NCBI RefSeq assembly: GCF_046119375.1
Contig: NW_027362767.1
Span: forward strand, 51,584,001-51,648,000
Origin: Phyllobates terribilis
Lineage: Eukaryota
DNA length: 64,000 nt
Direction of reading: 5' to 3'
A model generated the notes under the pieces. It was given only the letters and a program-made list of their open reading frames with translations. It made no database searches and was not told the origin of the DNA. Made by a program: the position numbers and the translations under genes. Below, one piece after another: positions 2,399 to 62,853 of the stretch; position 1 is the stretch's first letter, and each line of letters starts with the position of its first letter.

Positions 2399-3536
2399 GA
2401 TTCCATCAGCAACCAGCAGATTAGCGAGTGCAGCTCTGGAGTATAATACACGATGTAACTCAGGATCAGTACAGGATCAGTAATGTAATGTATGTACACA
2501 GTGACTCCACCAGCAGAATAGTGAGTGCAGCTCTGGAGTATAATACAGGATGTAACTCAGGATCAGTACACGATCAGTAATGTAATGTATGTACACAGTG
2601 ACTCCACCCGCAGAATAGTGAGTGCAGCTCTGGAGTATAATACAGGATGTAACGCAGGATCAGTAATGTATGTACACAGTGAATGCACCAGCAGAATAGT
2701 GAGTGCAGCTCTGGAGTATAATACAGGATGTAACTCAGGATCAGTACAGGATCAGTAATGTAATGTATGTACACAGTGACTGCACCAGCAGAATAGTGAG
2801 TGCAGCTCTGGAGTATAATACAGGATGTAACTCAGGATCAGTAATGTAATGTCTGTACACAGTGACTGCACCAGCAGAATAGTGAATGCAGCTCTGGGGT
2901 ATAATACAGGATGTAACTCAGGATCAGTAATGTAATGTATGTATACAGTGACTGCACAAGCAGAATAGTGAGTGCAGCTCTGGAGTATAATACAGGATGT
3001 AACTCAGGATCAGTACAGGCTAAGTAATGTAATGTATGTACACAGTGACTGCACCAGCAGAAGAGTGAGTGCAGCTCTGGAGTATAATACAGGATGTAAC
3101 TCAGGATCAGTAATGTAATGTATGTACACAGTGACTCCACCAGCAGAATAGTGAGTGCAGCTCTGGAGTATAATACAGGAGGTAACTCAGGATCAGTAAT
3201 GTAAAGTATGTACACAGTGACTCCACCAGCAGAATAGTGAGTGCAGCTCTGGAGTATAATACAGGATGTAACTCAGGATCAGTAATGTAATGTATATACA
3301 CAGTGACTGCACCAGCAGAATAGTGAGTGCATCTCTGGAGTATAATACAGGATGTAACTCAGGATCAGTAATGTAATGTATGTACACAGTGACTGCACCA
3401 GCAGAATAGTGAATGCAGCTCTGGAGTATAATACAGGATGTAACTCAGGATCAGTACAGGCTAAGTAATGTAATGTATGTACACAGTGACTGCACCAGCA
3501 GAATAGTGAGTGCAGCTCTGGAGTAGAATACAGGAA
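2399..3536 (+). repeat. ~86-bp tandem repeat array 1 (~13 units)
   Basis: Unit GTAATGTAATGTATGTACACAGTGACTGCACCAGCAGAATAGTGAGTGCAGCTCTGGAGTATAATACAGGATGTAACTCAGGATCA, with an optional 11-bp GTACAGGATCA insert. Confidence 0.97.
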
Positions 3537-3679
3537 GCAGGCATGCTGGGAGTTGTAGTCCTGCAGCCACACGGTCCTGGGGGGCGCTCACCCATAAAAC
3601 CACAACCTTGGCAATGGGGGGGGGGGGGGGGGGAGTACAGAGCTGAGCCCCGGAGACACTTCCTCCAGCCCAGAGAGGA

Positions 3680-4130
3680 TGCAGTGGATTTCCCCGGGTG
3701 TCTGGGACGTCGTCCACACAGAGCTCGTGTATTCCGGTCACAGACAGCAGAGGAGGCCGAGGGAAAGCAGAAAACAACGACCCTCATCGTGCTCGCCTCA
3801 GCCCGCACAGCAGCCACACTGCACACAACGGTCCCATGACGTCATCACAGAGACCTCACACGTAACGGGCGGGACACCGGAACCCCGCCTCCTCCCGCCC
3901 GGTCCCGCGGTCATCTCCTCACCTGAGACTCCCGCTGCCGCCGTGCTGTCAGCTCTGTGCCTGTGTCCCCCCCACCCCGAGCTCCCTGACCCAGCGTCTC
4001 CGGACCCGCCTGCTCACCAAGCTCATTCGCTCTCAGACGTCGTGACGTGCCGCTGCGGATTGGGAGACACTAAACTGTTATCAGCTGTGGGTAGAAAAGG
4101 GTTAATTCACCATGGTAAAAGCTGATTGGA
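3680..4130 (-). promoter_or_regulatory. MGAT2: CpG-rich promoter and putative non-coding first exon (~4050-3923) of MGAT2
   Basis: High CpG density, full CRE TGACGTCA 3837-3844, GC boxes, CCAAT near 4125 and a minus-strand donor CAG|GTGAGG at 3923/3922. A matching strong acceptor (ttctctttcttttgcag) lies at 606/605. Confidence 0.65.
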
Positions 4131-6265
4131 CCAGACTCGGGAAGAAGTTCTCACATTAGCCAATGAGGGCTCAGAACTGGGACAAAAGCTTTCCAATGGG
4201 AGATTTTGTTGCGAAATTGGGGGAGGAGTTATAAACGCGACTAACTTATTAGAACACTCGCTGGTTGGACGGGATAACCAATAAACCAGTGTGAAAGGGT
4301 TTAAGAAGGCGGGACTAGTGTGACATGACAGGACAAGCAGCGAATATAAACAGGTATAGCATTAACAGGGCGTTTTTTTTTGTTTTTAGGAAACAGGTGA
4401 AAGAGGGTTGTCAGCGAGACACGTATATGAGACTAATGGTGTAAGCGAATAACAGGGGCTTCGACAAAATGGCGTCCTGATAAGCTAGAGGGTGGGCAAA
4501 TGGATGAAGTTTTTGTTGCCCGTAGCAACCAATCACAGTACAGCTTTCATTTTCCGGGAGCACATATAGAAATAAAAGCTGTGCTGTGATTGGACAACAA
4601 ATGCAGCTTTATTTTAGGCAGCCATTATTTGGATTGTGTGGCAGAGAAAGCCTATAGCCAACAGCGAAGAAAGTCTGACCTGTTTTTGGGACATCACATG
4701 ACCCCTTTAATTTTGCAGAAACAATGCTGCAGTGTAAAGCATAGCAGAAAGAGAAAGCAGCAGTTTTGAGCCTCTGATGAGTCAGGGAAATGTTTCAATA
4801 GAACATTCCTTGTATTTTCCGCTCCTGCTGCCAATTAGTATTAAATACTGTTTGCAGGGCAAATCCAAGGGTGATTCTGCTAATGTATGACAAACCCAAC
4901 CTGCTCCAGACATGTTACCAATATGTATATAACAGCGCAGACAAGCATTTACATAATTAAACATCCTGGAGCTGTGTGCACTTCCCCTGACAAGGAAGTT
5001 TAGATGTAACGCACAGTACCCCATGTGTAAAGTGTGAGCCCGGGCACTGGTTATAGTCATGGGGTCATCCAGGATTGTAAAAAAAAAAAAAAAAAAAAAA
5101 AACAACTCCTCCAAAAATAGCACCACCCTTGTATGTGGTTTTGTCTGGCACTGCAGCCACGCTCCATTAAACTGAATAGGGATTTGCAGCTGCAAAACTG
5201 CAGCATATGTAGGGTTAAAGGGAATTAAATTAATGGGGACCTGCAGCCAAATCCAAACTTTAAAGGGCTACTCTGCCATACTTTATATAGAACATTAGCC
5301 CTTTATAAAGGAAATTATTCAGCATATTTTTATCCATGGAAGCAGTGCATAGGTTGCATAGGTAATGCTTCATGTATTTATGTAAATCAGGCTGGAAGTG
5401 CACAGGGGGCGTTGCTGCGCCTGGACAGGTGAGAGCAGGAGAGTTTAGCTTACTATGAGCCTGGAAGGTAGTCCTTATTGGCAATGGGAAGGAATAATAA
5501 ATCTTCATGTACAGGACAGATAGCAGCCACAGTGTGGACGGTTCCAAACTACATAGACGGGTTTTATGCCACTCTGACCTCATTTACATGTCCATTTTTC
5601 CCTGGTGCCTATTATAATCTATGGGACTGTTCACATCTCCGTGTATTTTGCAGACCGGGTGGTCAGTAACCAATCAGAGTCAGGATTCATATTCATCCAA
5701 ACCACAGATCAAAACTTGGCAATAAAAATCTATGGGTCTGGGAGGGGGAGAAAAATAAAATAAAAAATAGGACAGCGTGTGGACGCCGTATATATGCAGT
5801 CTGTTTCTTACTGACCGATAGGAGAAGCCGTCAGTTTGTTACATATAAATAAATAATAATAATAAAAAAAAAAAGATTACACTCCGAGGATAAAAGCGGC
5901 GGCTGACCAAACACTGATGAGAATCGGGCAGTTTTATTGCATATGAGAAAAAATCACCAAGGTTTGATTGAGGCCTTAGGTTATGTCCACACAAGACGCA
6001 TCCACTGTGGACTTTTCCAAGCGGCAAAATTCCCATCAATGTTTGGATCTCATTGTAAAAATTCTGCGATTATCTTCCTCATGAAAACACGGATGTGTGA
6101 ATCTGGGCTATAGGACAGTATGAAACAGTAGCACCATACTGCGATCTCTAGGCGAAAACTATTATTCTTTTTCTTGACCAGTATATACCACACAAAAGGT
6201 TTTGTAAAATCGCTACACCCTCCCAATATATCATCACAGTACGGCCAGCTGCGATGGGGGAGGGG

Positions 6266-8604
6266 GAGCTCTGGGGTAAAATATAGGATGTAACTCAGGA
6301 TCAGTAATGTAATGTATGTACACAGTGACTGCACCAGCAGAATAGTGAGTGCAGCTCTGGAGTATAATACAGGATGTAACTCAGGATCAGCACAGGATCA
6401 GTAATGTATTGTATGTACACAGTGACTGCACCAGCAGAATAGTGAGTGCAGCTCTGGAGTATAATACAGGATGTAACTCAGGATCAGTACAGGATCAGTA
6501 ATGTAATGTATGTACACAGTGACTGCACCAGCAGAATAGTGAGTGCAGCTCTGGAGTATACTACAGGATGTAACTCAGGATCAGTAATGTAATGTATGTA
6601 CACAGTGACTGCACCAGCAGAATAGTGAGTGCAGCTCTGGAGTATAATACAGGATGTAACTCTGGATCAGTACAGGATCAGTAATGTATGTACACAGTGA
6701 CTGCACCAGCAGAATAGTGAGTGCAGCTCTGGAGTATAATACAGGATGTAACTCTGGATCAGTACAGGATCAGTAATGTATGTACACAGTGACTGCACCA
6801 GCAGAATAGTGAGTGCAGCTCTGGAGTACAATACAGGATGTAACTCAGGATCAGTAATGTATGTACAGTGACTGCACCAGCAGAATAGTGAGTGCAGCTC
6901 TGGAGTATAATACAGGATGTAACTCAGGATCAGTAATGTATGTACACAGTGACTGCACCAGCAGAATAGTGAGTGCAGCTCTGGAGTATAATACAGGATG
7001 TAACTCAGGATCAGTAATGTAAGGTATGTACACAGTGACTGCACCAGCAGAATAGTGAGTGCAGCTCTGGGGTATAATACAGGATGTAACTCAGGATCAG
7101 TAATGTAATGTATGTACACAGTGACTGCACCAGCAGAATAGTGAGTGCAGCTCTGGAGTAGAATACAGGATGTAACTCAGGATCAGTAATGTAAGGTATG
7201 TACACAGTGACTGCACCAGCAGAATAGTGAGTGCAGCTCTGGAGTATAATACAGGATGTAACTCAGGATCAGCACAGGATCAGTAATGTATTGTATGTAC
7301 ACAGAGACTGCACCAGCAGAATAGTGAGTGCAGCTCTGGAGTATACTACAGGATGTAACTCAGGATCAGTACAGGATCATTAATGTAATGTATGTACACA
7401 GTGACTGCACCAGCAGAATAGTGAGTGCAGCTCTGGGGTATAATACAGGATGTAACTCAGGATCAGTAATGTATGTACACAGTGACTGCACCAGCAGAAT
7501 AGTGAGTGCAGCTCTGGGGTATAATACAGGATGTAACTCAGGATCAGTAATGTATGTACACAGTGACTGCACCACCAGAATAGTGAGTGCAGCTCTGGAG
7601 TATAATACAGGATGTAACTCAGGATCAGTACAGGATCAGTAATGTAATGTATGTACACAGTGACTGCACCAGCAGAATAGTGAGTGCAGCTCTGGAGTAT
7701 AATACAGGATGTAACTCAGGATCAGTAATGTAATATATGTACACAGTGACTGCACCAGCAGAATAGTGAGTGCAGCTCTGGAGTATAATACAGGATGTAA
7801 CTCAGGATCAGCACAGGATCAGTAATGTAATGTATGTACACAGTGACTGCACCAGCAGAATAGTGAGTGCAGCTCTGGAGTAGGATGTAACTCAGGATCA
7901 GTAATGTAATGTATGTACACAGTGACTGCACCAGCAGAATAGTGAGTGCAGCTCTGGAGTATAATACAGGATGTAACTCAGGATCAGTACCGGATCAGTA
8001 ATGTATGTACACAGTGACTGCACCAGCAGAATAGTGAGTGCAGCTCTGGAGTATAATACAGGATGTAACTCAGGATCAGTACAGGGTCAGTAATGTAATG
8101 TATGTACATAGTGACTGCACCAGCAGAATAGTGAGTGCAGCTCTGGAGTATAATACAGGATGTAACGCAGGATCAGTAATGTAATGTATGTACACAGTGA
8201 CTGCACCAGCAGAATAGTGAGTGCATCTCTGGAGTATAATACAGAATGTAACTCAGGATCAGTAATGTATGTACACAGTGACTGCACCAGCAGAATAGTG
8301 AGTGCAGCTCTGGAGTATAATACAGGATGTAACTCAGGATCAGTAATGTAATGTATGTACACAGTGAGTGCAGCTCTGGAGTATAATACAGGATGTAACT
8401 CAGGATCAGTAATGTAATGTATGTACACAGTGACTGCACCAGCAGAATAGTGAGTGCAGCTCTGGAGTATACTACAGGATGTAACTCAGGATCAGTACAG
8501 GATCAGTAATGTAATGTATGTACACAGTGACTGCACCAGCAGAATAGTGAGTGCAGCTCTGGAGTATAATACAGGATGTAACTCAGGATCAGTAATGTAA
8601 TGTA
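6266..8604 (+). repeat. ~86-bp tandem repeat array 2, left part (~26 units)
   Basis: Same unit as array 1. Confidence 0.97.
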
Positions 8605-9763
8605 CAGGTGCATCTCACTAAATTAGAGTATCAAAAAGTTAATTTATTTCAGTTCTTCAATGCAAAAAGTGAAACTCATTATATAGAGTCATTACAGAGT
8701 GATCTATTTCAAGTGTTTATTTCTGTTAATGTTGATGATTACGGCTTACAGCCAATGAATACACAAAAGTCATTATCTCAGTAAATTAGAATTATTAACA
8801 AAAAACACCTGCAAAGGCTTCCTAAGCCTTTAAAAAGGTCCCTTAGTCTGTTTCAGTAGGCATGTTTCATGGGGAAGACTGCTGAGTTGACAGATGTCCA
8901 GAAGGAAGCTATTGACACTAAAGCAAATGCAAAGTAAATTTTGCATTTCATTTGGAAATCAAGGTCCCAGAGTCTGGAGGAAGAGTGGAGAGGCCACAAT
9001 CCAAGCAGCTGGAGGTCTAGTGTGAAGTTTCCACAATCAGTGATGGTTTGGGGGGCCATGTCATCTGCTGGTGTAGGTCCACTGTGTTTTATCAAGACCA
9101 AAGTCAGTGCAGCCGTCTACCAGGACATTGTAGAGCACTTCATGCTTCCCTCTGCCGACAAGCTTTTTGGAGATGGAAATGTCATTCTCCAGCAGGACTT
9201 GGCCCTTGTCCACACTGACAAAAGTACCAATACCTGGTTTACACACAACAGTATCACTGTGCTTGATTGGCCAGAAAACTCGCCTGACCTTAACCCCATA
9301 GAGAATCTATTATAGAGAATCTATGGAGTATTGTCAAGAAGAAGATGAGAGACACCAGACCCAACAATGCAGACGAGCTGAAGGCTGCTATCAAAGCCAC
9401 CTGGGCTTCCATAACACCTCAGCAGTGCCACAGGCTGATCGCCTCCATGCCACATTGCCGCATTGATGCAGTAATTGATGCAAAAGGAGCCCGACCAAGT
9501 ATTGAGGGCATTTACTGAACATACATTTCAGATTTTAAAAACCTTTTTCAAGCCGTTATAAAGTATTCTAATTTACTGAGATAATGACTTTTGTGTTTTC
9601 ATTGGCTGTAAGCCATAATCATCAACATTAACAGAAATAAACACATGAAATAGATCCCTCTGTGTGTAATGACTCTATATTATATAGGAGTTTCACTTTT
9701 TGTATTGAAAAACTGAAATAGAATATCATCAAAAAGTTAATTTAATTTCGTCAGATGCACCTG
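8605..9763 (+). mobile_element. Tc1-family DNA transposon, internally deleted, inserted into the satellite
   Basis: TA TSD at 8603-8604 and 9764-9765. TIRs CAGGTGCATCT...AGATGCACCTG, ~200 bp long. Transposase fragment VKFPQSVMVWGAMSSAGVGPLCF...QQDLA...WPENSPDLNPIENL (8941-9315), interrupted after NPIENL and lacking the N-terminal DNA-binding region. Confidence 0.93.
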
Positions 9764-10283
9764 TATGTACACAGACTGCACCACCAGAATAGTGAGTGCA
9801 GCTCTGGAGTAGAATACAGGATGTAACTCAGGATCAGTACAGGATCAGTAATGTAATGTATGTACACAGTGACTGCACCACCAGAATAGCGAGTGCAGCT
9901 CTGGAGTATAATACAGGATGTAACTCAGGATCAGTAATGTAATGTATGTGCACAGAGACTGCACCAGCAGAATAGTGAGTGCAGCTCTGGAGTATAATAC
10001 AGGATGTAACTCAGGATCAGTAATGTAATGTATGTGCACAGAGACTGCACCAGCAGAATAGTGAGTGCAGCTCTGGAGTATAATACAGGATGTAACTCAG
10101 GATCAGTAATGTAATGTATGTGCACAGAGACTGCACCAGCAGAATAGTGAGTGCAGCTCTGGAGTATAATACAGGATGTAACTCAGGATCAGTACAGGGT
10201 CAGTAATGTAATGTATGTACATAGTGACTGCACCAGCAGAATAGTGAGTGCAGCTCTGGAGTATAATGCAGGATGTGATTTAG
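9764..10283 (+). repeat. ~86-bp tandem repeat array 2, right part (~6 units)
   Basis: Resumes in register after the Tc1 (AATG-TA|element|TA-TGTACAC). Confidence 0.95.
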
Positions 10284-10790
10284 GATGGGGGAGGGGGCGG
10301 CTTCCTGCCTGGTGTTATTTTAGGTCGCGTGTTACTTTCGATATGAATGACACTCACCCCAATGTAAATGAGGGCAGCCAGAAATGTAAAGCGTTCATGT
10401 CCTGCAGTCTCAGCAGCTGCTATGAGGGTGAAGAAATTTAGAGAAATGGGAAATTATTTCATTTCAGCTACAGTTCATTTATGGCAGAGAAGTAAAGTGT
10501 CCGCTGTCGCTGGTATTTGTGACACTGACAGCTGCTGCCATTATTGCTGCCATCTGCCATTGAGCTGCTTCTCCTGTTCACCCTGAACCAGCGACGTGGG
10601 TCTGATTTAGTTGTAAAGTTCCACAATACAGCGAGAGAGAGCTCAGAGGAGACCCCCAGAAACTATGGCCGTACAGAAATGTCTCGCACTGAGCGTGCCC
10701 GTTGATCCTGGAAGGGGCGCACAACCCCCCCCCCCCCCCCCCAAAAAAAATATAAATTTCTAAAAACAGGTTCAATAAATAAAAGTAAAA

Positions 10791-17800: not shown

Positions 17801-20800
17801 CTTTGGTTGTCCTTCTTGCCTGTGAGCGGCGCTATCGCTGGCCGCTCAGAAACATGACGTGACCCCCAGCGGCAGCAGTCTCAGACATCCGCTGATGTCA
17901 CGTCAAGTTCCGGCTGCAGCGCTCCCCGGTGAGTGATGGGCTGTGGCCGGGGTCTTACTTGACGTGACATCAGTGGAAGAAAGCCGGCTGCAGCCGGGGG
18001 TCACGTGATGCCTGTGAGCGGTCACCGATAGCGCCGCTCACAGGCAAGAAGGACAACCACAGGTATTTACAAAAACACTTTTGGGCACAGGGTAAATACA
18101 TTGGGGAAATAATAAAAAGTACTGGGCATCTTCTTTAACACCTGTTATTCACACCCTCAAAAATAATAAAAAGCCTCAATAAATTTCCTGTCTAGACTTT
18201 GCAAATGATCTCTTAAAGGGAATCTATCATGTCTCCAAACACTATTAACCTGCGCAGGTTAATAGTCTTCCAAAGTGGTGCAGCCGCCGCACTGAAAATG
18301 CAGCTACAGGCAGGAAATAAACTTTATTCCTCCAGGCAGCCTCTGGCTTTCAGTCATAGAGGTGTGACGGTAAGGTGAACTAAATTTTGAGAAAGGGAAA
18401 AAATAAATAAAAAATTCTGCCATTTTGTGTTTCTTTTTTTTTTTTATTCAATAAAACCATTTGGGGGTAAATGTAAGTAATTCATTGTGATGTATTAGTT
18501 ACAAACAATTTTGTCATTTGAGTTTTTTTAATGCTTGCCACTGTATGCTGATTAGCACAGAGCGGTCAGACGGCTGTCTCCGGACCGTGCATGGCGCCTC
18601 CTGTAGGCCTGCAGTCGCCGCTGCATCTGCCTGTATTGACATCTTCCACTCTGCCCGTTGTGTCTCTGCACAGAGCTCGAGTCTACTGCTCATATGCAAG
18701 AGGCTGTGAGGATGACGTAGAAGTCATCCACATCAACCAAGGCGGGAGTGGCGATGATTGTAGGTGCAACGGAGGCACCAAGCACAGTGGCTACTAAATT
18801 GATTGGCGCAGGATAGTTATTAACCCCTTTATCCCCAAGGTGGTTTGCACGTTAATGACCGGGCCAATTTTTACAATTCTGACCACTGTCACTTTATGAG
18901 GTAATTACTCTGGAACGCTTCAACAGATCCCCCTGATTCTGAGATTGTTTTTTCGTGACATATTGTGCTTCGTGATTGTGGTAAAATTTCTTGGATATCA
19001 CTTGCGTTTATTTGTGAAAAAAAAAATGGAAATTTGGCAAAAATTTAGAAAATTTAGCAATTTTCTAAATTTAAATTTTTATGCCCTTAAATCAGAGAGA
19101 TATGTCACACAAAATAGTTAATAAATAACATTTCCCACATGTCTACTTTACATCAGCACAATTTCGGAACCCAATTTTTTTTAATTTTTTTATTATTATT
19201 AGGGAGCTATAAGCGTTAAAAGTTGACCAGCGATTTCTCATTTTTCCAACAAAATTTACAAAACCATTTTTTTTAGGGACCACATCACATTTGAAGTCAC
19301 TTTGAGAGGTCTTTATGACAGAAAATACCCAAAAGTGACACCATTCTAAAAACTGCACCCCTCAAGGTGCTCAAAACCAAATTCAAGAACTTTATTAACC
19401 CTTCAGGTGCTTCACAGGAATTTTTGGAATGTGGAAGAAAAAAATGAACATTTAACTTTTTTCACAAAAATGTTACTTTAGACCCAATTTTTTTTATTTT
19501 CACAGGGGTAACAGGAAAAAATGGACCCCAAAATTTGTTGTGCACCTGGGGGTTCAAGGTGCTCACCACACATCTAGATAAGTTCCCTGAGGGGTCTAGT
19601 TTCCAAAATGGTGTCACTTGTGGGGGGTTTCCAATGTTTAGGCACATCAGGGGCTCCCCAAACGCAACATGGCGTCCGCTAATTATTCAAGCAAATTTTA
19701 CAATCAAAAAGTCAAATGGCGCTCCTTCCCTTCCGAGCCCTACCGTGCGCCCAAACAGTGTTTTTCCCCCACACATGGGGTATCTGCGTGCCCAGGGGAA
19801 ATTGCACGGCAAAGTTCAGAAGAGAAGGAGCACTGTGTAACTTTTTGAGTGCAAAATTGGCTGGAATAGAGAGCGGATGCCATGTTATGTTTGGAGAGCC
19901 CCCTCAAGGATTTTATCAAGGGGTATAGTGAACATTTTAAACCCAGAGGTACGGCACAGAATTTGATAACATTAGGTCATCATATTGAATAAGTTGTCAT
20001 TACTCTTGAGAGCAAGTGCTCGCTACTTGAGTTTGCATCGGGTACTCAGGTATGCACCATGTATCGCGGAAGCTCGAGTGACATGCTCGAGTCCCTGCTC
20101 CGCATGTTTCACGGTTATTAGACACCCCAAAAAAAACATGCAGGGATCGCTCGTGCATGGCAGGCAATCACCACAAGTCTTTTTTGCCCGCGAAGCATAT
20201 GGGGCGGAGACTCGAACATCCGCGATACTCGGTGCATAACCGAGCACCAGATGCAAACTCAAGTAGCGAGCACTTGCGCTCAACACTAGTCGCCATATCG
20301 TCATCTTTTTATTTTTTACTTTTGAAAAACATCCCAACCCTAATACAACCCCAACGTTTATTTTTTACGCTGCTCCTCATGCGGTATAAGTGATTAGAGG
20401 ACTTTATTCTTCGGGTCGGTGTAATTACAGAGATACCAGAATCATATCGGGTTTTTATGACTGACAGCTATCACACACCAAAAGGCGCATTTTTTTTGTC
20501 AAAACTAGTTTTTGCATCGCCATATTTTGAGAGCTATAATTTTTCCATATTTCGGCCCACAGTGATGCGACTGCTTGTTTTTTGAGGGATGACTTGACGT
20601 TGTTATTGGTACCATTTTAAGGCACGTGACATTTTTTGATCGCTTTCTATTCCGATTTTTGGGAGGCAGAATAAACAAAAGACAACAATTCAGGAATTGT
20701 TTTTTTTTTATTCGACTCCGCGTGTGGTAAAATTGATAAGGCAGCTTTATTCTTCGGGTCAGTACGTTTACAGCAGTACCACATTTATATTGTTTTTCTA

Positions 20801-29923: not shown

Positions 29924-31014
29924 CAGGGATGTCAAACTCAAGTACACAGAGGGCCAAAATAAAAAACTTGGACAAAGTCGCGGGCCAACCTTGATATATA
30001 CCATATTAAAGAAGTGTCTACAATTGAGGAAGTTTTTCCTTATCAAATATAATGATGAACCTTTTCAAATGAAGACAAACTTAAAGGGGTTGTCCCACAA
30101 ACAAAATACATTTTAATTTACAGATCTTAGAACAACTTATACAAATAAACATAATCACAAATGGAGCATACTGGAATAATATAATATGTTATGGAACAGC
30201 AGTAAAAAGCATATGGCCCAATGGCCAAAGTTAAATATGTAATAACAAAGGATAAAAAGCCTTGAATAAATACAGATAATAAAGTATGATGCTAGCAAAA
30301 TTGCCCCCCAAACACAGTATGATACCCCTACAGTGAATTCCTCCACACACACAGTATGATGACCCACACAGCCCTCCATGCGCTATAATGGGACCCACAC
30401 AGCCCTCCATACATTTATAATGGGCCCCACACAGCTCTCCATGTGTTATAATGGGGCCCACATAGTCCTCCATACAGTATAATGGGCCCCACACAGCCCT
30501 CCATACATTTATAATGGGCCCCACACAGCCCTCCATGTGTTATAATGGGGCCCACATAGTCCTCCATACATTTATAATGGGCCCCACACAGCCCTCCATG
30601 CGTTATAATGGGGCCCACATAGTCCTCCATACAGTATAATGGGCCCCACACAGCCCTCCATGTGTTATAATGGGGCCCACATAGTCCTCCATACAGTATA
30701 ATGGGCCCCACACAGCCCTCCATGCGTTATAATAGGGCCCACATAGTCCTCCATACAGTATAATGGGCCCCACACAGCCCTCCATGCATTTATAATGGGC
30801 CCCACACAGCCCTCCATGCATTTATAATGGGCCCCACACAGCCCTCCATGCATTTATAATGGGCCCCACACAGCCCTCCATGCATTTATAATGGGCCCCA
30901 CACAGCCCTCCATGTGTTATAATAGGGCCCACATAGTCCTTCATGCAGTATAATGCCAGGGGAGTGTCGCGGGGCAAATCTTATCACCCTGCGAGCCAGT
31001 AGTTGACATATGTG
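29924..31014. mobile_element. hAT (Charlie/Chap-like) non-autonomous element with an internal minisatellite
   Basis: Ends CAGGGATGTCAAACT / AGTTGACATATGTG; degenerate 8-bp TSD CCTTAGAT / TCTTAGAG. Confidence 0.75.
30375..30945 (+). repeat. ~31-32-bp minisatellite with two alternating variants
   Basis: CCCACACAGCCCTCCATGCATTTATAATGGG alternating with CCACATAGTCCTCCATACAGTATAATGGG. Confidence 0.92.
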
Positions 31015-36514: not shown

Positions 36515-37779
36515 TTAACCCCTTAAGCCCCGAGGGTGGTTTGCACGTTAATGACCAGGCCAATTTTTACAATTCTGACCACTGTCACTTTATGAGGTAA
36601 TTACTCAGGAACGCTTCAACGGATCCCCCTGATTCTGAGACTGTTTTTTCGGGACATATTGTACTTCATGATTGTGGTAACATTTCTTTGATATCACTTG
36701 CGTTTATTTGTGAAAAAAACGGAAATTTGGCGAAAATGTTGAATATTTTGCAATTTTCAAAATTAAAATTTTTGTGCCCTTAAATCAGAGAGATAGGTCA
36801 CACAAAATAGTTAATAAATAACATTTCCCACATGTCTACTTTACATCAGCACAATTTTGGAACCAAAATTTTTTTGTTAGGGAGCTATAAGGGTTAAAAA
36901 TTGACAAGCAATTTCTCATTTTTCCAACAAAATTTACAAAACCATTTTTTTAGGGACCACATCACATTTGAAGTCACTTTGAGAGGTGTTCATGACAGAA
37001 AATACCCAAAAGTGACACCATTCTAGAAACTGCCCCCTCAAGGTGCTCAAAACCACATTCAAGAAGTTTATTAACCCTTCAGGTGCTTCACAGGAATTTT
37101 TGGAATGTGGAAGAAAAAAAATGAACATTTAACTTTTTTCACAAAAATGTTACTTTAGACCCAATTTTTTTTTATTTTCGCAGGGGTAACAAGAAAAAAT
37201 GGACCCCAAAATTTGTTGTGCAACTTCCCCTGGGCACGCAGATACCCAATATGTGGGGAAAAAACACTGTTTGGGCGCACGGCAGGGCTCGGAAGGGAAG
37301 GAGCGCCATTTGACTTTTTGACCGCTAATTATTCAAGCAAATTTTGCAGACGCCATGTTGTATTTGGAGAGCCCCTGTGTGCCCAAACATTGGAGCTCCC
37401 CCACAAGTGACCCCATTTTGGAAACTAGACCCCTCAAGGCACCTATCTAGATGCATAGTGAGCACTTAGAACCCCTAGGTGCTTCACAAATTGATTCGTA
37501 AAAATGAAAAAGTGGAAAAAAACAACACTTTGTTTTTTACGAATCACCTCCCCTTGCCCCCGCAATGGGAGTGCAGCATCGCGGGGGTTAATGTGCTGGG
37601 AGCGGTGCAGGACCGCTCCCTGCGGGTGTCAGCTGTGACAATCAGCTGACACCCGGCGGCGATCGCGCCCGCACAGCCTGTGCGCGCGCGCGATCGCCAT
37701 GACGTACTAATACGGGTCTGGCTCTTAAGTCCCAGGGCACAGATGCGTATTAGTACGTCAAATGTTGTTAAGGGGTTAA
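36515..37779 (+). mobile_element. non-autonomous piggyBac-like element, short copy
   Basis: TTAA at both ends, CCCCTTAA TIR; homologous to 18820-21760. Confidence 0.88.
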
Positions 37780-38324
37780 AGTCACTTCAAAAATGAAGCG
37801 GTGCCTGAAACAATAGGGCTTATAAATGGTGTTGGAAAAATTGCTACTCAACTTTTAAGCCTTCAAAATCATGCTGACAAAGTAGATTATATGGTAAATA
37901 TTAACTATTTTGTGGAGTATGACTATTTTCAAAGCATAAAACTTTAATGTTAGAAAATTGTTAATTAAAATGAGTGTAGGCTGAAATTACTGACCATCTA
38001 ATGTGCAAGGGAAATCCCAGCTCCCTCCCGTCTCCCCCTTAAGACATCATGAACCCGAATTGGGGTGTGGGAGAAGCCTGTTAACAGTTTCTTTAGCCAC
38101 CTGACTTCAAATTTCACATGGAAAAAATATTTCTCCCGACCCCCTTTAAGAGACTGACATACCTTTAAGTCCATTGGACTATTTTCAGCCAACCCCATCA
38201 TCAGCTGTGGCGGCCATGCAATATTTGATTAGCCGCTCTATTACTTATACGGCTGGATGTGTAATGAGATAAGAAAAAAATAAATCCACAGGACACAATA
38301 CATGTAACATGGGGTTGTGCGGTT

Positions 38325-38330: not shown

Positions 38331-38793
38331 TTTTTTTGTGTTTTTTTTTTTTTTCTGTTTTCAATTGAGAAATACATCATCTGTTTACAAAATAGCTTCT
38401 GAAAAATACAAGGAGAACGGGTACTATAAAACAAAGCAAACTCCAGTCATGAGACAATACATACATCATGCGGAAGCAACAGTCTGATCTTCAGGATGGG
38501 AGAAACTAGAGAGAAAAGTTACAACACAGAAGGTGGGCAAACAAAAAAGAAGAAACCAGGCCAAACATTGTCCTGGGGAGAAGAAAAGAAATATACAAAC
38601 ATCTTAGGTTTCTAGAAAGCTGTGGAGGATGACTTGGGAGTGCGGGGGAGGGGGGCCGGATCCTGTAAACAAATGACTTATAACCTGGTGGCTGGCGTGA
38701 CTACAAGGAATAGACATTACCGGTCCTGTTGTGTGGCTTTTATATATAGATGGGCTGTTAAAATGTAGTATGAGCGGGAATTATTGCGTGGGC

Positions 38794-40573: not shown

Positions 40574-62853
<22,280 letters not shown>

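What the first reader, a model, noticed from the sequence alone, without database searches (positions are those of the whole stretch)
6253..10296. The 86-bp satellite array is bracketed by a perfect 13-bp direct repeat, suggesting a mobile satellite
Seen: GATGGGGAGGGGG lies immediately left (6253-6265) and right (10284-10296) of the whole ~4-kb array, including its nested Tc1. The array starts and ends at different points of the unit, with GAT microhomology at the right junction. Known: variable 7-20-bp TSDs are typical of target-primed reverse transcription or staggered-break repair, not of in-situ slippage. Inference: the repeat inserts as circularly permuted monomers or oligomers (RNA-mediated or extrachromosomal circles) and then expands. 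That would explain its dispersal to three loci in 64 kb with no transposon ends.
Basis: partly seen in the sequence, partly recalled or inferred. Interest (0 to 1): 0.7.

Follow-up and report, generated by a model that had tools for sequence, protein, structure and literature searches.

The report
Frog satellite block with target duplication
A 4-kb block of a very abundant 86-base frog repeat is flanked by two perfect copies of a 14-base host sequence, so it was most likely inserted as a ready-made block during repair of a staggered DNA break; this is a clean single example of a known way for repeats to spread, not proof of a self-mobile satellite.

Summary
The bracket is real and slightly stronger than reported. 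It abuts both ends of the array (6267-10283) with no gap. In 20,000 random flank pairs from this window the longest match was 12 bases, and those matches did not have to abut anything.

The array holds about 33 monomers of 79-97 bp and was later split by a dead Tc1-like transposon (8605-9763, TA duplication). A short-read contig from a second individual crosses the left junction without a mismatch. That junction is therefore not an assembly artefact. No empty allele was seen.

My reading is that a pre-formed satellite block was inserted once into a G-rich site, with an 11-14 bp target duplication and a 3-base (GAT) overlap at the right junction. This fits staggered-break repair or templated capture.

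The wider claim of a mobile satellite that lands as monomers and then expands is not supported:
- The other two loci in the window have no flanking repeat.
- Monomers do not cluster by locus.
- There is no ribozyme, poly-A tail, terminal inverted repeat or shared flank.
- The RNA run shows no enrichment of the satellite.

Similar cases are described for Drosophila and Tribolium satellites. Interest is modest.

The parts
6253..6266 (+). Left copy of the 14-base direct repeat GATGGGGGAGGGGG (presumed target-site duplication)
   Evidence: It ends exactly where the satellite begins. A contig of a second individual spans 5882-6305 with no differences.
6267..8604 (+). Satellite array 2, left part: about 27 monomers of 66-97 bp (modal 86). 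The first partial monomer starts at AGCTCTGG and carries 3 substitutions in 33 bases.
   Evidence: TRF, blastn, monomer cutting and alignment, edge statistics.
8605..9763 (+). Dead, internally deleted Tc1/mariner-like transposon nested in the array. Its TA duplication is at 8603-8604 and 9764-9765, and the array phase continues across it.
   Evidence: Inverted ends of 28 nt and further inner arms. ORF 8941-9312 hits Pfam DDE_3 at E = 3.6e-9. Sequence.
9766..10283 (+). Satellite array 2, right part: about 6 monomers, three of them identical in a row (a local duplication). The last partial monomer ends ...GATGTGATTTAG(GAT) with 4 substitutions in 35 bases.
   Evidence: nhmmer extends the match to 10286, so GAT is shared with the repeat.
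10284..10297 (+). Right copy of the 14-base direct repeat. Its first 3 bases (GAT) could equally be satellite sequence, so the duplication is 11-14 bases.
2412..3535 (+). Satellite array 1 (about 13 monomers), same orientation, 2.7 kb to the left, with no flanking direct repeat. It lies in the presumed first intron of a minus-strand gene.
40852..41698 (-). Satellite array 3 (about 10 monomers), opposite orientation, with no flanking direct repeat.
41700..42121 (+). Short plus-strand satellite piece joined head-to-head to array 3. It is interrupted by a 312-base insert (about 41754-42066) and ends at GGAGTATAAT|.

Best explanation
A pre-formed block of several to many monomers of a very abundant dispersed 86-bp satellite was inserted once into a G-rich site, ...CAGCTGC-GATGGGGGAGGGGG-CGGCTTCC.... 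The site lies about 2.2 kb upstream of a gene's first exon.

The break had staggered ends 11-14 bases apart. One 3' end paired with the satellite donor through the 3 bases GAT and was extended on it. The other junction was sealed without overlap, and filling in the stagger left the target sequence on both sides. The donor was most likely DNA: an extrachromosomal circle of satellite, or another array copied by template switching during break repair or replication. This reading needs no dedicated transposition machinery.

Later events were small local duplications inside the array and the landing of a Tc1-like transposon in it.

Shown: the repeat, its exact abutment, the overlap, the mixed monomer content, the later Tc1 insertion and the presence in two individuals. 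Inferred: the insertion itself (no empty site was seen), the staggered break and the donor form.
For: - The 14-mer is perfect and lies at distance 0/0 from the array ends. The null maximum is 12 in 20,000 pairs, and the core 11-mer is otherwise near-absent from the window.
- The satellite match runs 3 bases into the right copy, giving the GAT overlap.
- The flanks are single-copy by depth: 6-9 against a run baseline of about 7. They share nothing with the flanks of the other loci, so the array is foreign to its site.
- The satellite's summed word depth is about 660,000-710,000 times the unique depth in three DNA runs (a rough figure, not a copy number). Donor copies are therefore plentiful.
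- Monomers of the three loci are intermixed, as expected if a ready-made block arrived.
- There are no inverted ends, poly-A or ribozyme.
- Precedent: Rsp-like satellite insertions in Drosophila have junction microhomology, and in four clusters a 32-bp duplication of the target. eccDNA and FoSTeS/MMBIR were proposed there (PMC7403614). eccDNA insertion was also proposed for Tribolium Cast arrays (PMC11610590).
Against: - No empty site was found. Only one species was available, and the two individuals with coverage both carry the filled left junction.
- Only 1 of 3 loci in the window has such a repeat.
- A 3-base overlap is weak evidence on its own.
- The two edge monomers are more diverged than the interior: 3/33 and 4/35 substitutions against 1.44%. 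If that reflects age, a perfect 14/14 repeat is somewhat unexpected.
- The intermixing of monomers could also come from exchange between loci after a small insertion.
Confidence: 0.55

Rival explanations
1. The satellite is a non-autonomous retroelement, SINE- or retrozyme-like. Its transcript, possibly circular or multimeric, is reverse-transcribed at a nicked target by a LINE or Penelope enzyme, leaving a variable 7-20 base duplication.
For: - The duplication length fits target-primed reverse transcription (established knowledge).
- The overlap lies between the insert's right end and the first bases of the duplication, which is where priming microhomology is expected.
- Non-LTR retrozymes are tandem repeats with duplications larger than 4 bp when present (PMC7229834), and this genome holds retrozyme-type repeats according to earlier notes.
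- In one search the best-supported loose end inside the satellite is one fixed monomer position (...GGAGTATAAT| at 3432: 7, 4 and 2 contigs in three runs, with unrelated flanks). The small piece of locus 3 ends at the same position. This hints at a preferred terminus.
Against: - No ribozyme or any Rfam family matches, even at E up to 10.
- The monomer and the 141-nt stretch (about 1.6 units) fold no better than shuffles.
- The unit is 86 bp, not 150-450 bp.
- There is no poly-A or simple-repeat tail, and the target is G-rich rather than A/T-rich.
- The four array ends in the window fall at four different monomer positions, and array 2 itself does not end at the recurrent position.
- In the RNA run the satellite-to-flank depth ratio (about 125,000) is below the ratio in DNA (about 700,000), so there is no sign of specific expression.
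Confidence: 0.15
2. The two copies are not a duplication made at insertion. The site held a G-rich microsatellite-like tract, (GGGGGA)n, or an older local duplication. The array landed or grew in its middle, and the right-hand GAT comes from the satellite's own CAGGAT.
For: The core is low-complexity (G5AG5). The left copy continues ...GGGGGAG, in register with a G5A period. G-rich runs occur elsewhere in the window: a third G5AG5 at 38644, and poly-G at 3613 and 50980. GAT is indeed part of the unit.
Against: It needs the array to split the tract so that exactly G5AG5 remains on both sides, and also to end on GAT, which occurs at about 3 of 86 positions. The exact 11-mer occurs only once more in 128 kb of both strands. 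Nothing beyond the 14 bases is repeated.
Confidence: 0.15
3. The array is the internal tandem-repeat region of a cut-and-paste or rolling-circle transposon (a MITE, hAT or Helitron type carrying arrays, as noted elsewhere in this genome), and the repeat is that element's target duplication.
For: Earlier notes on this genome describe hAT elements stuffed with tandem arrays. Transposon-borne satellite-like arrays are well documented, for example oyster Helentrons (PMC7492417) and clam MITEs (PMC3879986), both listed.
Against: The satellite runs right up to both copies of the repeat, with no non-satellite terminal sequence. There are no inverted ends within 400 bases and no flank shared among the three loci. 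To my knowledge no DNA transposon superfamily makes a 14-base duplication, and Helitrons make none.
Confidence: 0.07
4. Campbell-type integration. A circle that carried satellite plus a copy of the G-rich 14-mer, for example one excised from another locus, recombined with the chromosomal 14-mer. The flanking repeat is then the crossover homology and not a filled-in stagger.
For: Single-crossover integration of a circle always leaves the homology as a direct repeat. Satellite circles are common in animals (PMC3225859, listed).
Against: The 14-mer is not satellite sequence and is found next to no other array in the window. Fourteen bases is very short for homologous recombination.
Confidence: 0.05

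Closest known systems
Rsp-like satellite insertions into 1.688 clusters on the Drosophila simulans/mauritiana X chromosome (Sproul et al. 2020, PMC7403614)
   Same: Blocks of a satellite appear at new euchromatic sites. One junction has short microhomology and the other is variable. In four clusters 32 bp of the target is duplicated on the far side. The proposed routes are eccDNA reintegration, microhomology-mediated repair and FoSTeS/MMBIR.
   Different: There the target is another satellite, and synteny across species proves the insertions. Here the target is unique G-rich DNA, the duplication is 14 bp, and no empty site is available.
Cast1-Cast9 euchromatic satellite arrays of Tribolium castaneum (Volaric et al. 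2024, PMC11610590)
   Same: Short arrays are dispersed in gene-rich DNA, and monomers from different loci are intermixed. Array edges are more variable than the interior. Spread was ascribed to transposition or eccDNA insertion, with microhomology at some junctions.
   Different: The preferred sites there are poly(A)/(T) tracts, and the passages I searched mention no flanking direct repeats. Here there is a G-rich site and a clean 14-base repeat, but only one locus.
Non-LTR retrozymes / amphibian satellite 2 (Cervera and de la Pena 2020, PMC7229834)
   Same: They are tandem repeats thought to move as units, are abundant in amphibians, and have target duplications larger than 4 bp when present.
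   Different: They are defined by a type I hammerhead ribozyme in every repeat and have units of about 150-450 bp. This 86-bp unit has no ribozyme match and no special fold.
LINE-mediated (target-primed) insertions such as SINEs, SVA and processed pseudogenes
   Same: They have a variable 7-20 base target duplication and microhomology between the insert's 3' end and the start of the duplication.
   Different: This array has no poly-A or LINE-type tail, no A/T-rich nick site and no constant 3' end among the copies in the window.

Membership tests
Non-LTR retrozyme | A self-cleaving (type I hammerhead) ribozyme in every tandem unit | tested here: not met
   Rfam gave 0 hits in the whole window at gathering score and 0 hits in 6200-7300 at E up to 10.
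Non-LTR retrozyme | Unit of about 150-450 bp that forms a highly self-paired RNA | tested here: not met
   The unit is 86 bp (79-97). RNA fold z-scores are -0.7 to +0.6 on both strands.
Non-LTR retrozyme | Expressed as linear and circular RNA | tested here: inconclusive
   Satellite words are present in the RNA run X12, but at a lower ratio to unique flank than in the DNA runs. Contigs cannot show circles.
Target-primed reverse-transcribed (LINE-mobilised) element | Variable 7-20 base target-site duplication | tested here: met
   An 11-14 base perfect repeat flanks array 2. It is absent at the other two loci.
Target-primed reverse-transcribed (LINE-mobilised) element | Poly-A or LINE-derived 3' tail next to the downstream duplication | tested here: not met
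   The right end reads ...GATGTGATTTAG(GAT) and the left end starts AGCTCTGG. There is no A- or T-run at either junction.
Target-primed reverse-transcribed (LINE-mobilised) element | Constant 3' end with variable 5' truncation among copies | tested here: inconclusive
   The four array ends in the window fall at four different monomer positions. However, read contigs show a recurrent end at ...GGAGTATAAT| with unrelated flanks (table 7).
DNA transposon carrying an internal array (MITE, hAT, Helitron/Helentron) | Non-satellite termini (inverted ends, or 5'-TC...CTRR-3' for Helitrons) shared among copies | tested here: not met
   The satellite abuts the repeat directly. No inverted match longer than 9 bases exists within 400-base flanks, and no flank is shared between loci.
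DNA transposon carrying an internal array (MITE, hAT, Helitron/Helentron) | Superfamily-typical fixed-length target duplication (2-11 bases) | tested here: not met
   The duplication is 11-14 bases at one locus and absent at two. The superfamily lengths are from general knowledge.
Satellite block insertion by break repair or eccDNA capture | Foreign array in otherwise unique DNA, with junction microhomology and/or duplicated target | tested here: met
   Flank depth is about single-copy. There is a 3-base GAT overlap and a 14-base duplication.
Satellite block insertion by break repair or eccDNA capture | Empty site in another individual or a related species | tested here: inconclusive
   Only one species was found. 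Run X5 (a second individual) carries the filled left junction, X6 has no cover there, and no loose end at 6266 is among the listed ones.
Satellite block insertion by break repair or eccDNA capture | The satellite is present on extrachromosomal circles | not testable with these tools
   No circle-enriched library was available.

The most novel reading that the evidence does not exclude
The 86-bp repeat is a genuinely mobile, protein-less and ribozyme-less tandem element with a defined terminus (...GGAGTATAAT|). It is copied into staggered nicks from multimeric RNA or rolling-circle DNA, leaving variable target duplications. That would make it a satellite that transposes as an array. The hint is that read contigs from three runs end at that one monomer position with unrelated flanks, and the small piece of locus 3 ends there too.
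Probability: 0.12. Interest if true: 0.65.

Novelty: new member of a known kind. Interest (0 to 1): 0.3.

Why it matters
How short satellite arrays reach gene-rich DNA is still argued, with circles, gene conversion and transposons all proposed. Clean junctions that show a target duplication are rare. This locus is a tidy vertebrate example: unique flanks, a perfect 14-base duplication and a 3-base overlap. It comes from a giant, repeat-rich frog genome in which the family's summed read depth is several hundred thousand times that of unique sequence (a rough measure, not a copy number). The array sits about 2.2 kb upstream of an expressed first exon, so such insertions can reshape regulatory neighbourhoods. 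On its own it is one locus and adds no new principle. Its value is as a seed for a genome-wide junction survey.

Tried and rejected
- **Chance match:** rejected by the null pairs and the motif count.
- **Assembly artefact:** rejected for the left junction by a contig of another individual. The right junction is untested.
- **Both junctions in one read layout:** I laid 3200-6650 instead, as the tool advised. No joint across the whole array could therefore be seen.
- **Orthologous empty site:** the run search returned only one species.
- **Arrays 1 and 2 as one array split by the 2.7-kb spacer:** rejected, because the phases do not join and the spacer holds a CpG-rich promoter and an expressed exon.
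- **Shared transposon around the arrays:** no shared flanks or inverted ends.
- **Ribozyme or structured RNA:** none found.
- **Solo monomers with their own duplications:** none in the window (nhmmer).
- **Frog host contigs in JGI metagenomes:** two exact scans with 22- and 24-base pieces of the unit found nothing.
- **Unit sequence in the literature, and poison-frog satellite papers:** nothing found.
- **Earlier notes of this scan on the same repeat, by sequence and by words:** nothing found.
- **Naming the neighbouring gene from ORFs:** no Pfam hits.
- **Fetching other arrays through predicted proteins:** not tried, because short-read contigs stop within 17-39 bases of an array edge and could not give both flanks.
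Full report
**1. What is in the sequence**

GATGGGGAGGGGG has no match in the window even with one substitution allowed. The DNA reads GATGGGGGAGGGGG, 14 bases, perfect at 6253-6266 and 10284-10297. Nothing beyond these 14 bases is shared: tgc|DR|agc on the left and tag|DR|cgg on the right.

The satellite was mapped with TRF, blastn and an nhmmer profile. It begins at 6267, the first base after the left copy. It ends at 10283, or at 10286 if the GAT shared with the unit's CAGGAT is counted. The repeat therefore abuts both ends without a gap, and the duplication proper is 11-14 bases.

The array holds about 33 monomers. The modal length is 86 bp. Slippage variants of 81 and 97 bp arise from loss of one GTAAT or gain of one CAGGATCAGTA, and rarer forms of 66, 79 and 92 bp also occur.

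A dead Tc1-like element sits inside at 8605-9763.
- It has inverted ends and TA on both sides (8603-8604 and 9764-9765).
- It has a DDE_3 remnant at E = 3.6e-9.
- The monomer phase continues across it, so it landed after the array existed.

**2. Is it more than chance?**

In 20,000 random pairs of 48-base flanks from the non-satellite part of this window, the longest exact match anywhere was 12 bases. The observed 14-mer in addition lies at distance 0 from both junctions. The low-complexity core G5AG5 occurs only once more in the window (38644), against 0.02 expected from shuffles. Chance is excluded.

**3. Is it an assembly artefact, and is there an empty allele?**

The run search with the unique left flank (3536-6266) returned one species only, with four samples.

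I therefore laid 3200-6650.
- A 461-base contig of a second individual (run X5) covers 5882-6305 with no difference. It reaches 39 bases into the array.
- The reference-like sample (X1) covers 5882-6283.
- X6 has no cover at the junction.
- No loose end at 6266 is among those listed.

The left junction is thus real and is shared by at least two individuals. No empty allele was seen, and the right junction was not tested.

**4. What kind of repeat is it?**

The summed word depth of the satellite is about 660,000-710,000 times the depth of the unique flank in all three DNA runs. The tool warns that this is no copy number, so I take it only as "very abundant".

Three loci in 64 kb is then unremarkable. 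They are 2412-3535 (+), this array, and 40852-42121.
- **Flanks.** The flanks of the three loci share nothing with each other, and no inverted ends exist within 400 bases.
- **Flanking repeats.** Arrays 1 and 3 have no flanking direct repeat of 7 bases or more.
- **Locus 3.** It is two arrays joined head to head at the unit's small internal palindrome. The short arm is interrupted by a 312-base insert.
- **Solo monomers.** nhmmer finds none elsewhere in the window.

**5. Monomers do not cluster by locus**

| Measure | Result |
|---|---|
| Mean substitution distance within loci | 0.024-0.037 |
| Mean substitution distance between loci | 0.026-0.035 |
| Between-minus-within distance (substitutions plus indel events) | 0.0003, permutation p = 0.45 |
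| Nearest neighbour in the same locus | 27.8 of 52 monomers, against 22.2 expected |

Rare variants are shared between arrays 2 and 3:
- a 7-base deletion with GT;
- a second 7-base deletion;
- the T33 substitution (alignment column) on 92-bp monomers;
- C17 and G15 (the same numbering).

Only short runs of identical neighbours show local duplication (A2b 2-4, A2a 5-6, A2a 14-15). A single monomer that landed and then expanded would give locus-specific clades, and this is not seen. Either a mixed block arrived, or the interior has since exchanged sequence with other arrays.

The two edge monomers are more diverged than the interior: 3/33 and 4/35 substitutions against 1.44% (P = 0.012 and 0.0016). 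Diverged array edges are known from other satellites (PMC11610590). They could also reflect error-prone synthesis at the junctions, which would sit better with the perfect 14/14 repeat than great age does.

**6. RNA route**

- Rfam gives no match in the window at gathering score, and none in 6200-7300 at E up to 10.
- A single unit (86 nt) and a 141-nt stretch (about 1.6 units) fold no better than shuffles on either strand.
- There is no A- or T-run at either junction, and the target is G-rich.
- Run X12 behaves as RNA. Among the unique bins almost only 3896-4127 is covered; a 79-letter contig lies inside array 1 and a depth-2 contig at 6086-6233.
- One 152-base X12 contig has depth 110. Its alignment stops at 3922, at a minus-strand CAG|GTGAGG donor.
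- In X12 the satellite reaches about 250,000 where the neighbouring unique flank has depth 2. This ratio is lower than in DNA, so nothing points to specific transcription.

**7. Mechanism**

The simplest account of a foreign block in unique DNA, bracketed by 11-14 duplicated target bases with a 3-base overlap at one junction, has three steps:
1. A break occurred with ends staggered by 11-14 bases.
2. The 3' end complementary to the start of the duplication annealed to satellite DNA (or RNA) through GAT and was extended.
3. The far junction was sealed without overlap.

The same signature is produced by capture of a circle or fragment, by template switching during break-induced replication, and by target-primed reverse transcription. 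The sequence alone cannot separate them. I favour a DNA donor for two reasons. All the specific marks of retro-elements are missing. Satellite circles are well documented in human cells (PMC3225859) and in Drosophila.

Close precedents exist. Rsp-like satellite insertions in Drosophila have junction microhomology, and in four clusters a 32-bp duplicated target (PMC7403614). Dispersed Cast arrays in Tribolium are another (PMC11610590).

**8. What remains open**

In one search the best-supported loose end inside the satellite lies at 3432, that is ...GCAGCTCTGGAGTATAAT|. It is supported by 7, 4 and 2 contigs in three runs, with median loose lengths of 215-255 and unrelated continuations. The short arm of locus 3 ends at exactly that monomer position (42121). 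Many arrays may therefore end at one fixed point, which would be expected of an element with a defined terminus. It is the basis of the "novel case".

**9. Verdict**

The reading as an insertion with target duplication is the best explanation for this locus (confidence about 0.55, plus 0.15 for its RNA variant). The generalisation to a "mobile satellite that seeds monomers" is not supported by the other two loci or by the monomer relationships. The case is a new member of a known kind.

Noticed in passing
window 3432 and 42121 (monomer position ...GGAGTATAAT|): Read contigs from three runs end at this one satellite position and continue into unrelated sequence (7, 4 and 2 contigs, table 7). 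The short plus-strand satellite piece of locus 3 ends at the same position. This may be a preferred array terminus or a breakage hot spot.
   Followed up: partly
window 3922-4046, minus strand: An RNA-type run has a 152-base contig at depth about 110 here. Its alignment stops at a CAG|GTGAGG donor (3923/3922) inside a 63% GC island (3500-4000). This is probably the first exon of an unnamed minus-strand gene. Array 1 then lies in intron 1 and array 2 about 2.2 kb upstream of the start.
   Followed up: partly
window 3541-3560, minus strand: ACTACAACTCCCAGCATGC is a textbook ZNF143/Staf-type motif (from memory). It directly abuts the right end of array 1. Many unrelated genomic contigs align to just these 19 bases (loose ends at 3541 and 3559).
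   Followed up: no
window 41661-41754: There is a head-to-head inverted junction of two satellite arrays, centred on the unit's small internal palindrome (CTGCAC...GTGCAG). It looks like a fold-back or strand-switch event, and no target duplication is present.
   Followed up: partly
window 41754-42066: A 312-base insert lies in the short satellite arm; another note of this scan reads it as hammerhead-related. Rfam at gathering score finds no ribozyme anywhere in the window. About 15 bases of the monomer are missing at the insertion point.
   Followed up: no
window 30363-30955: A 31/63-bp tandem array of about 19 copies (CCCACACAGCCCTCCATGCAGTTATAATGGG) was reported by TRF. It may belong to the 31-bp satellite family noted elsewhere in this genome.
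   Followed up: no
window 18820-19816 and 36515-37780: A dispersed repeat pair of about 1 kb, 85-92% identical and partly inverted (self-blast). It is probably two copies of a transposon.
   Followed up: no
window 6086-6233: The RNA-type run X12 holds a low-depth (2) 151-base contig on the unique DNA just left of array 2. It may be background, or weak transcription running towards or out of the array.
   Followed up: no
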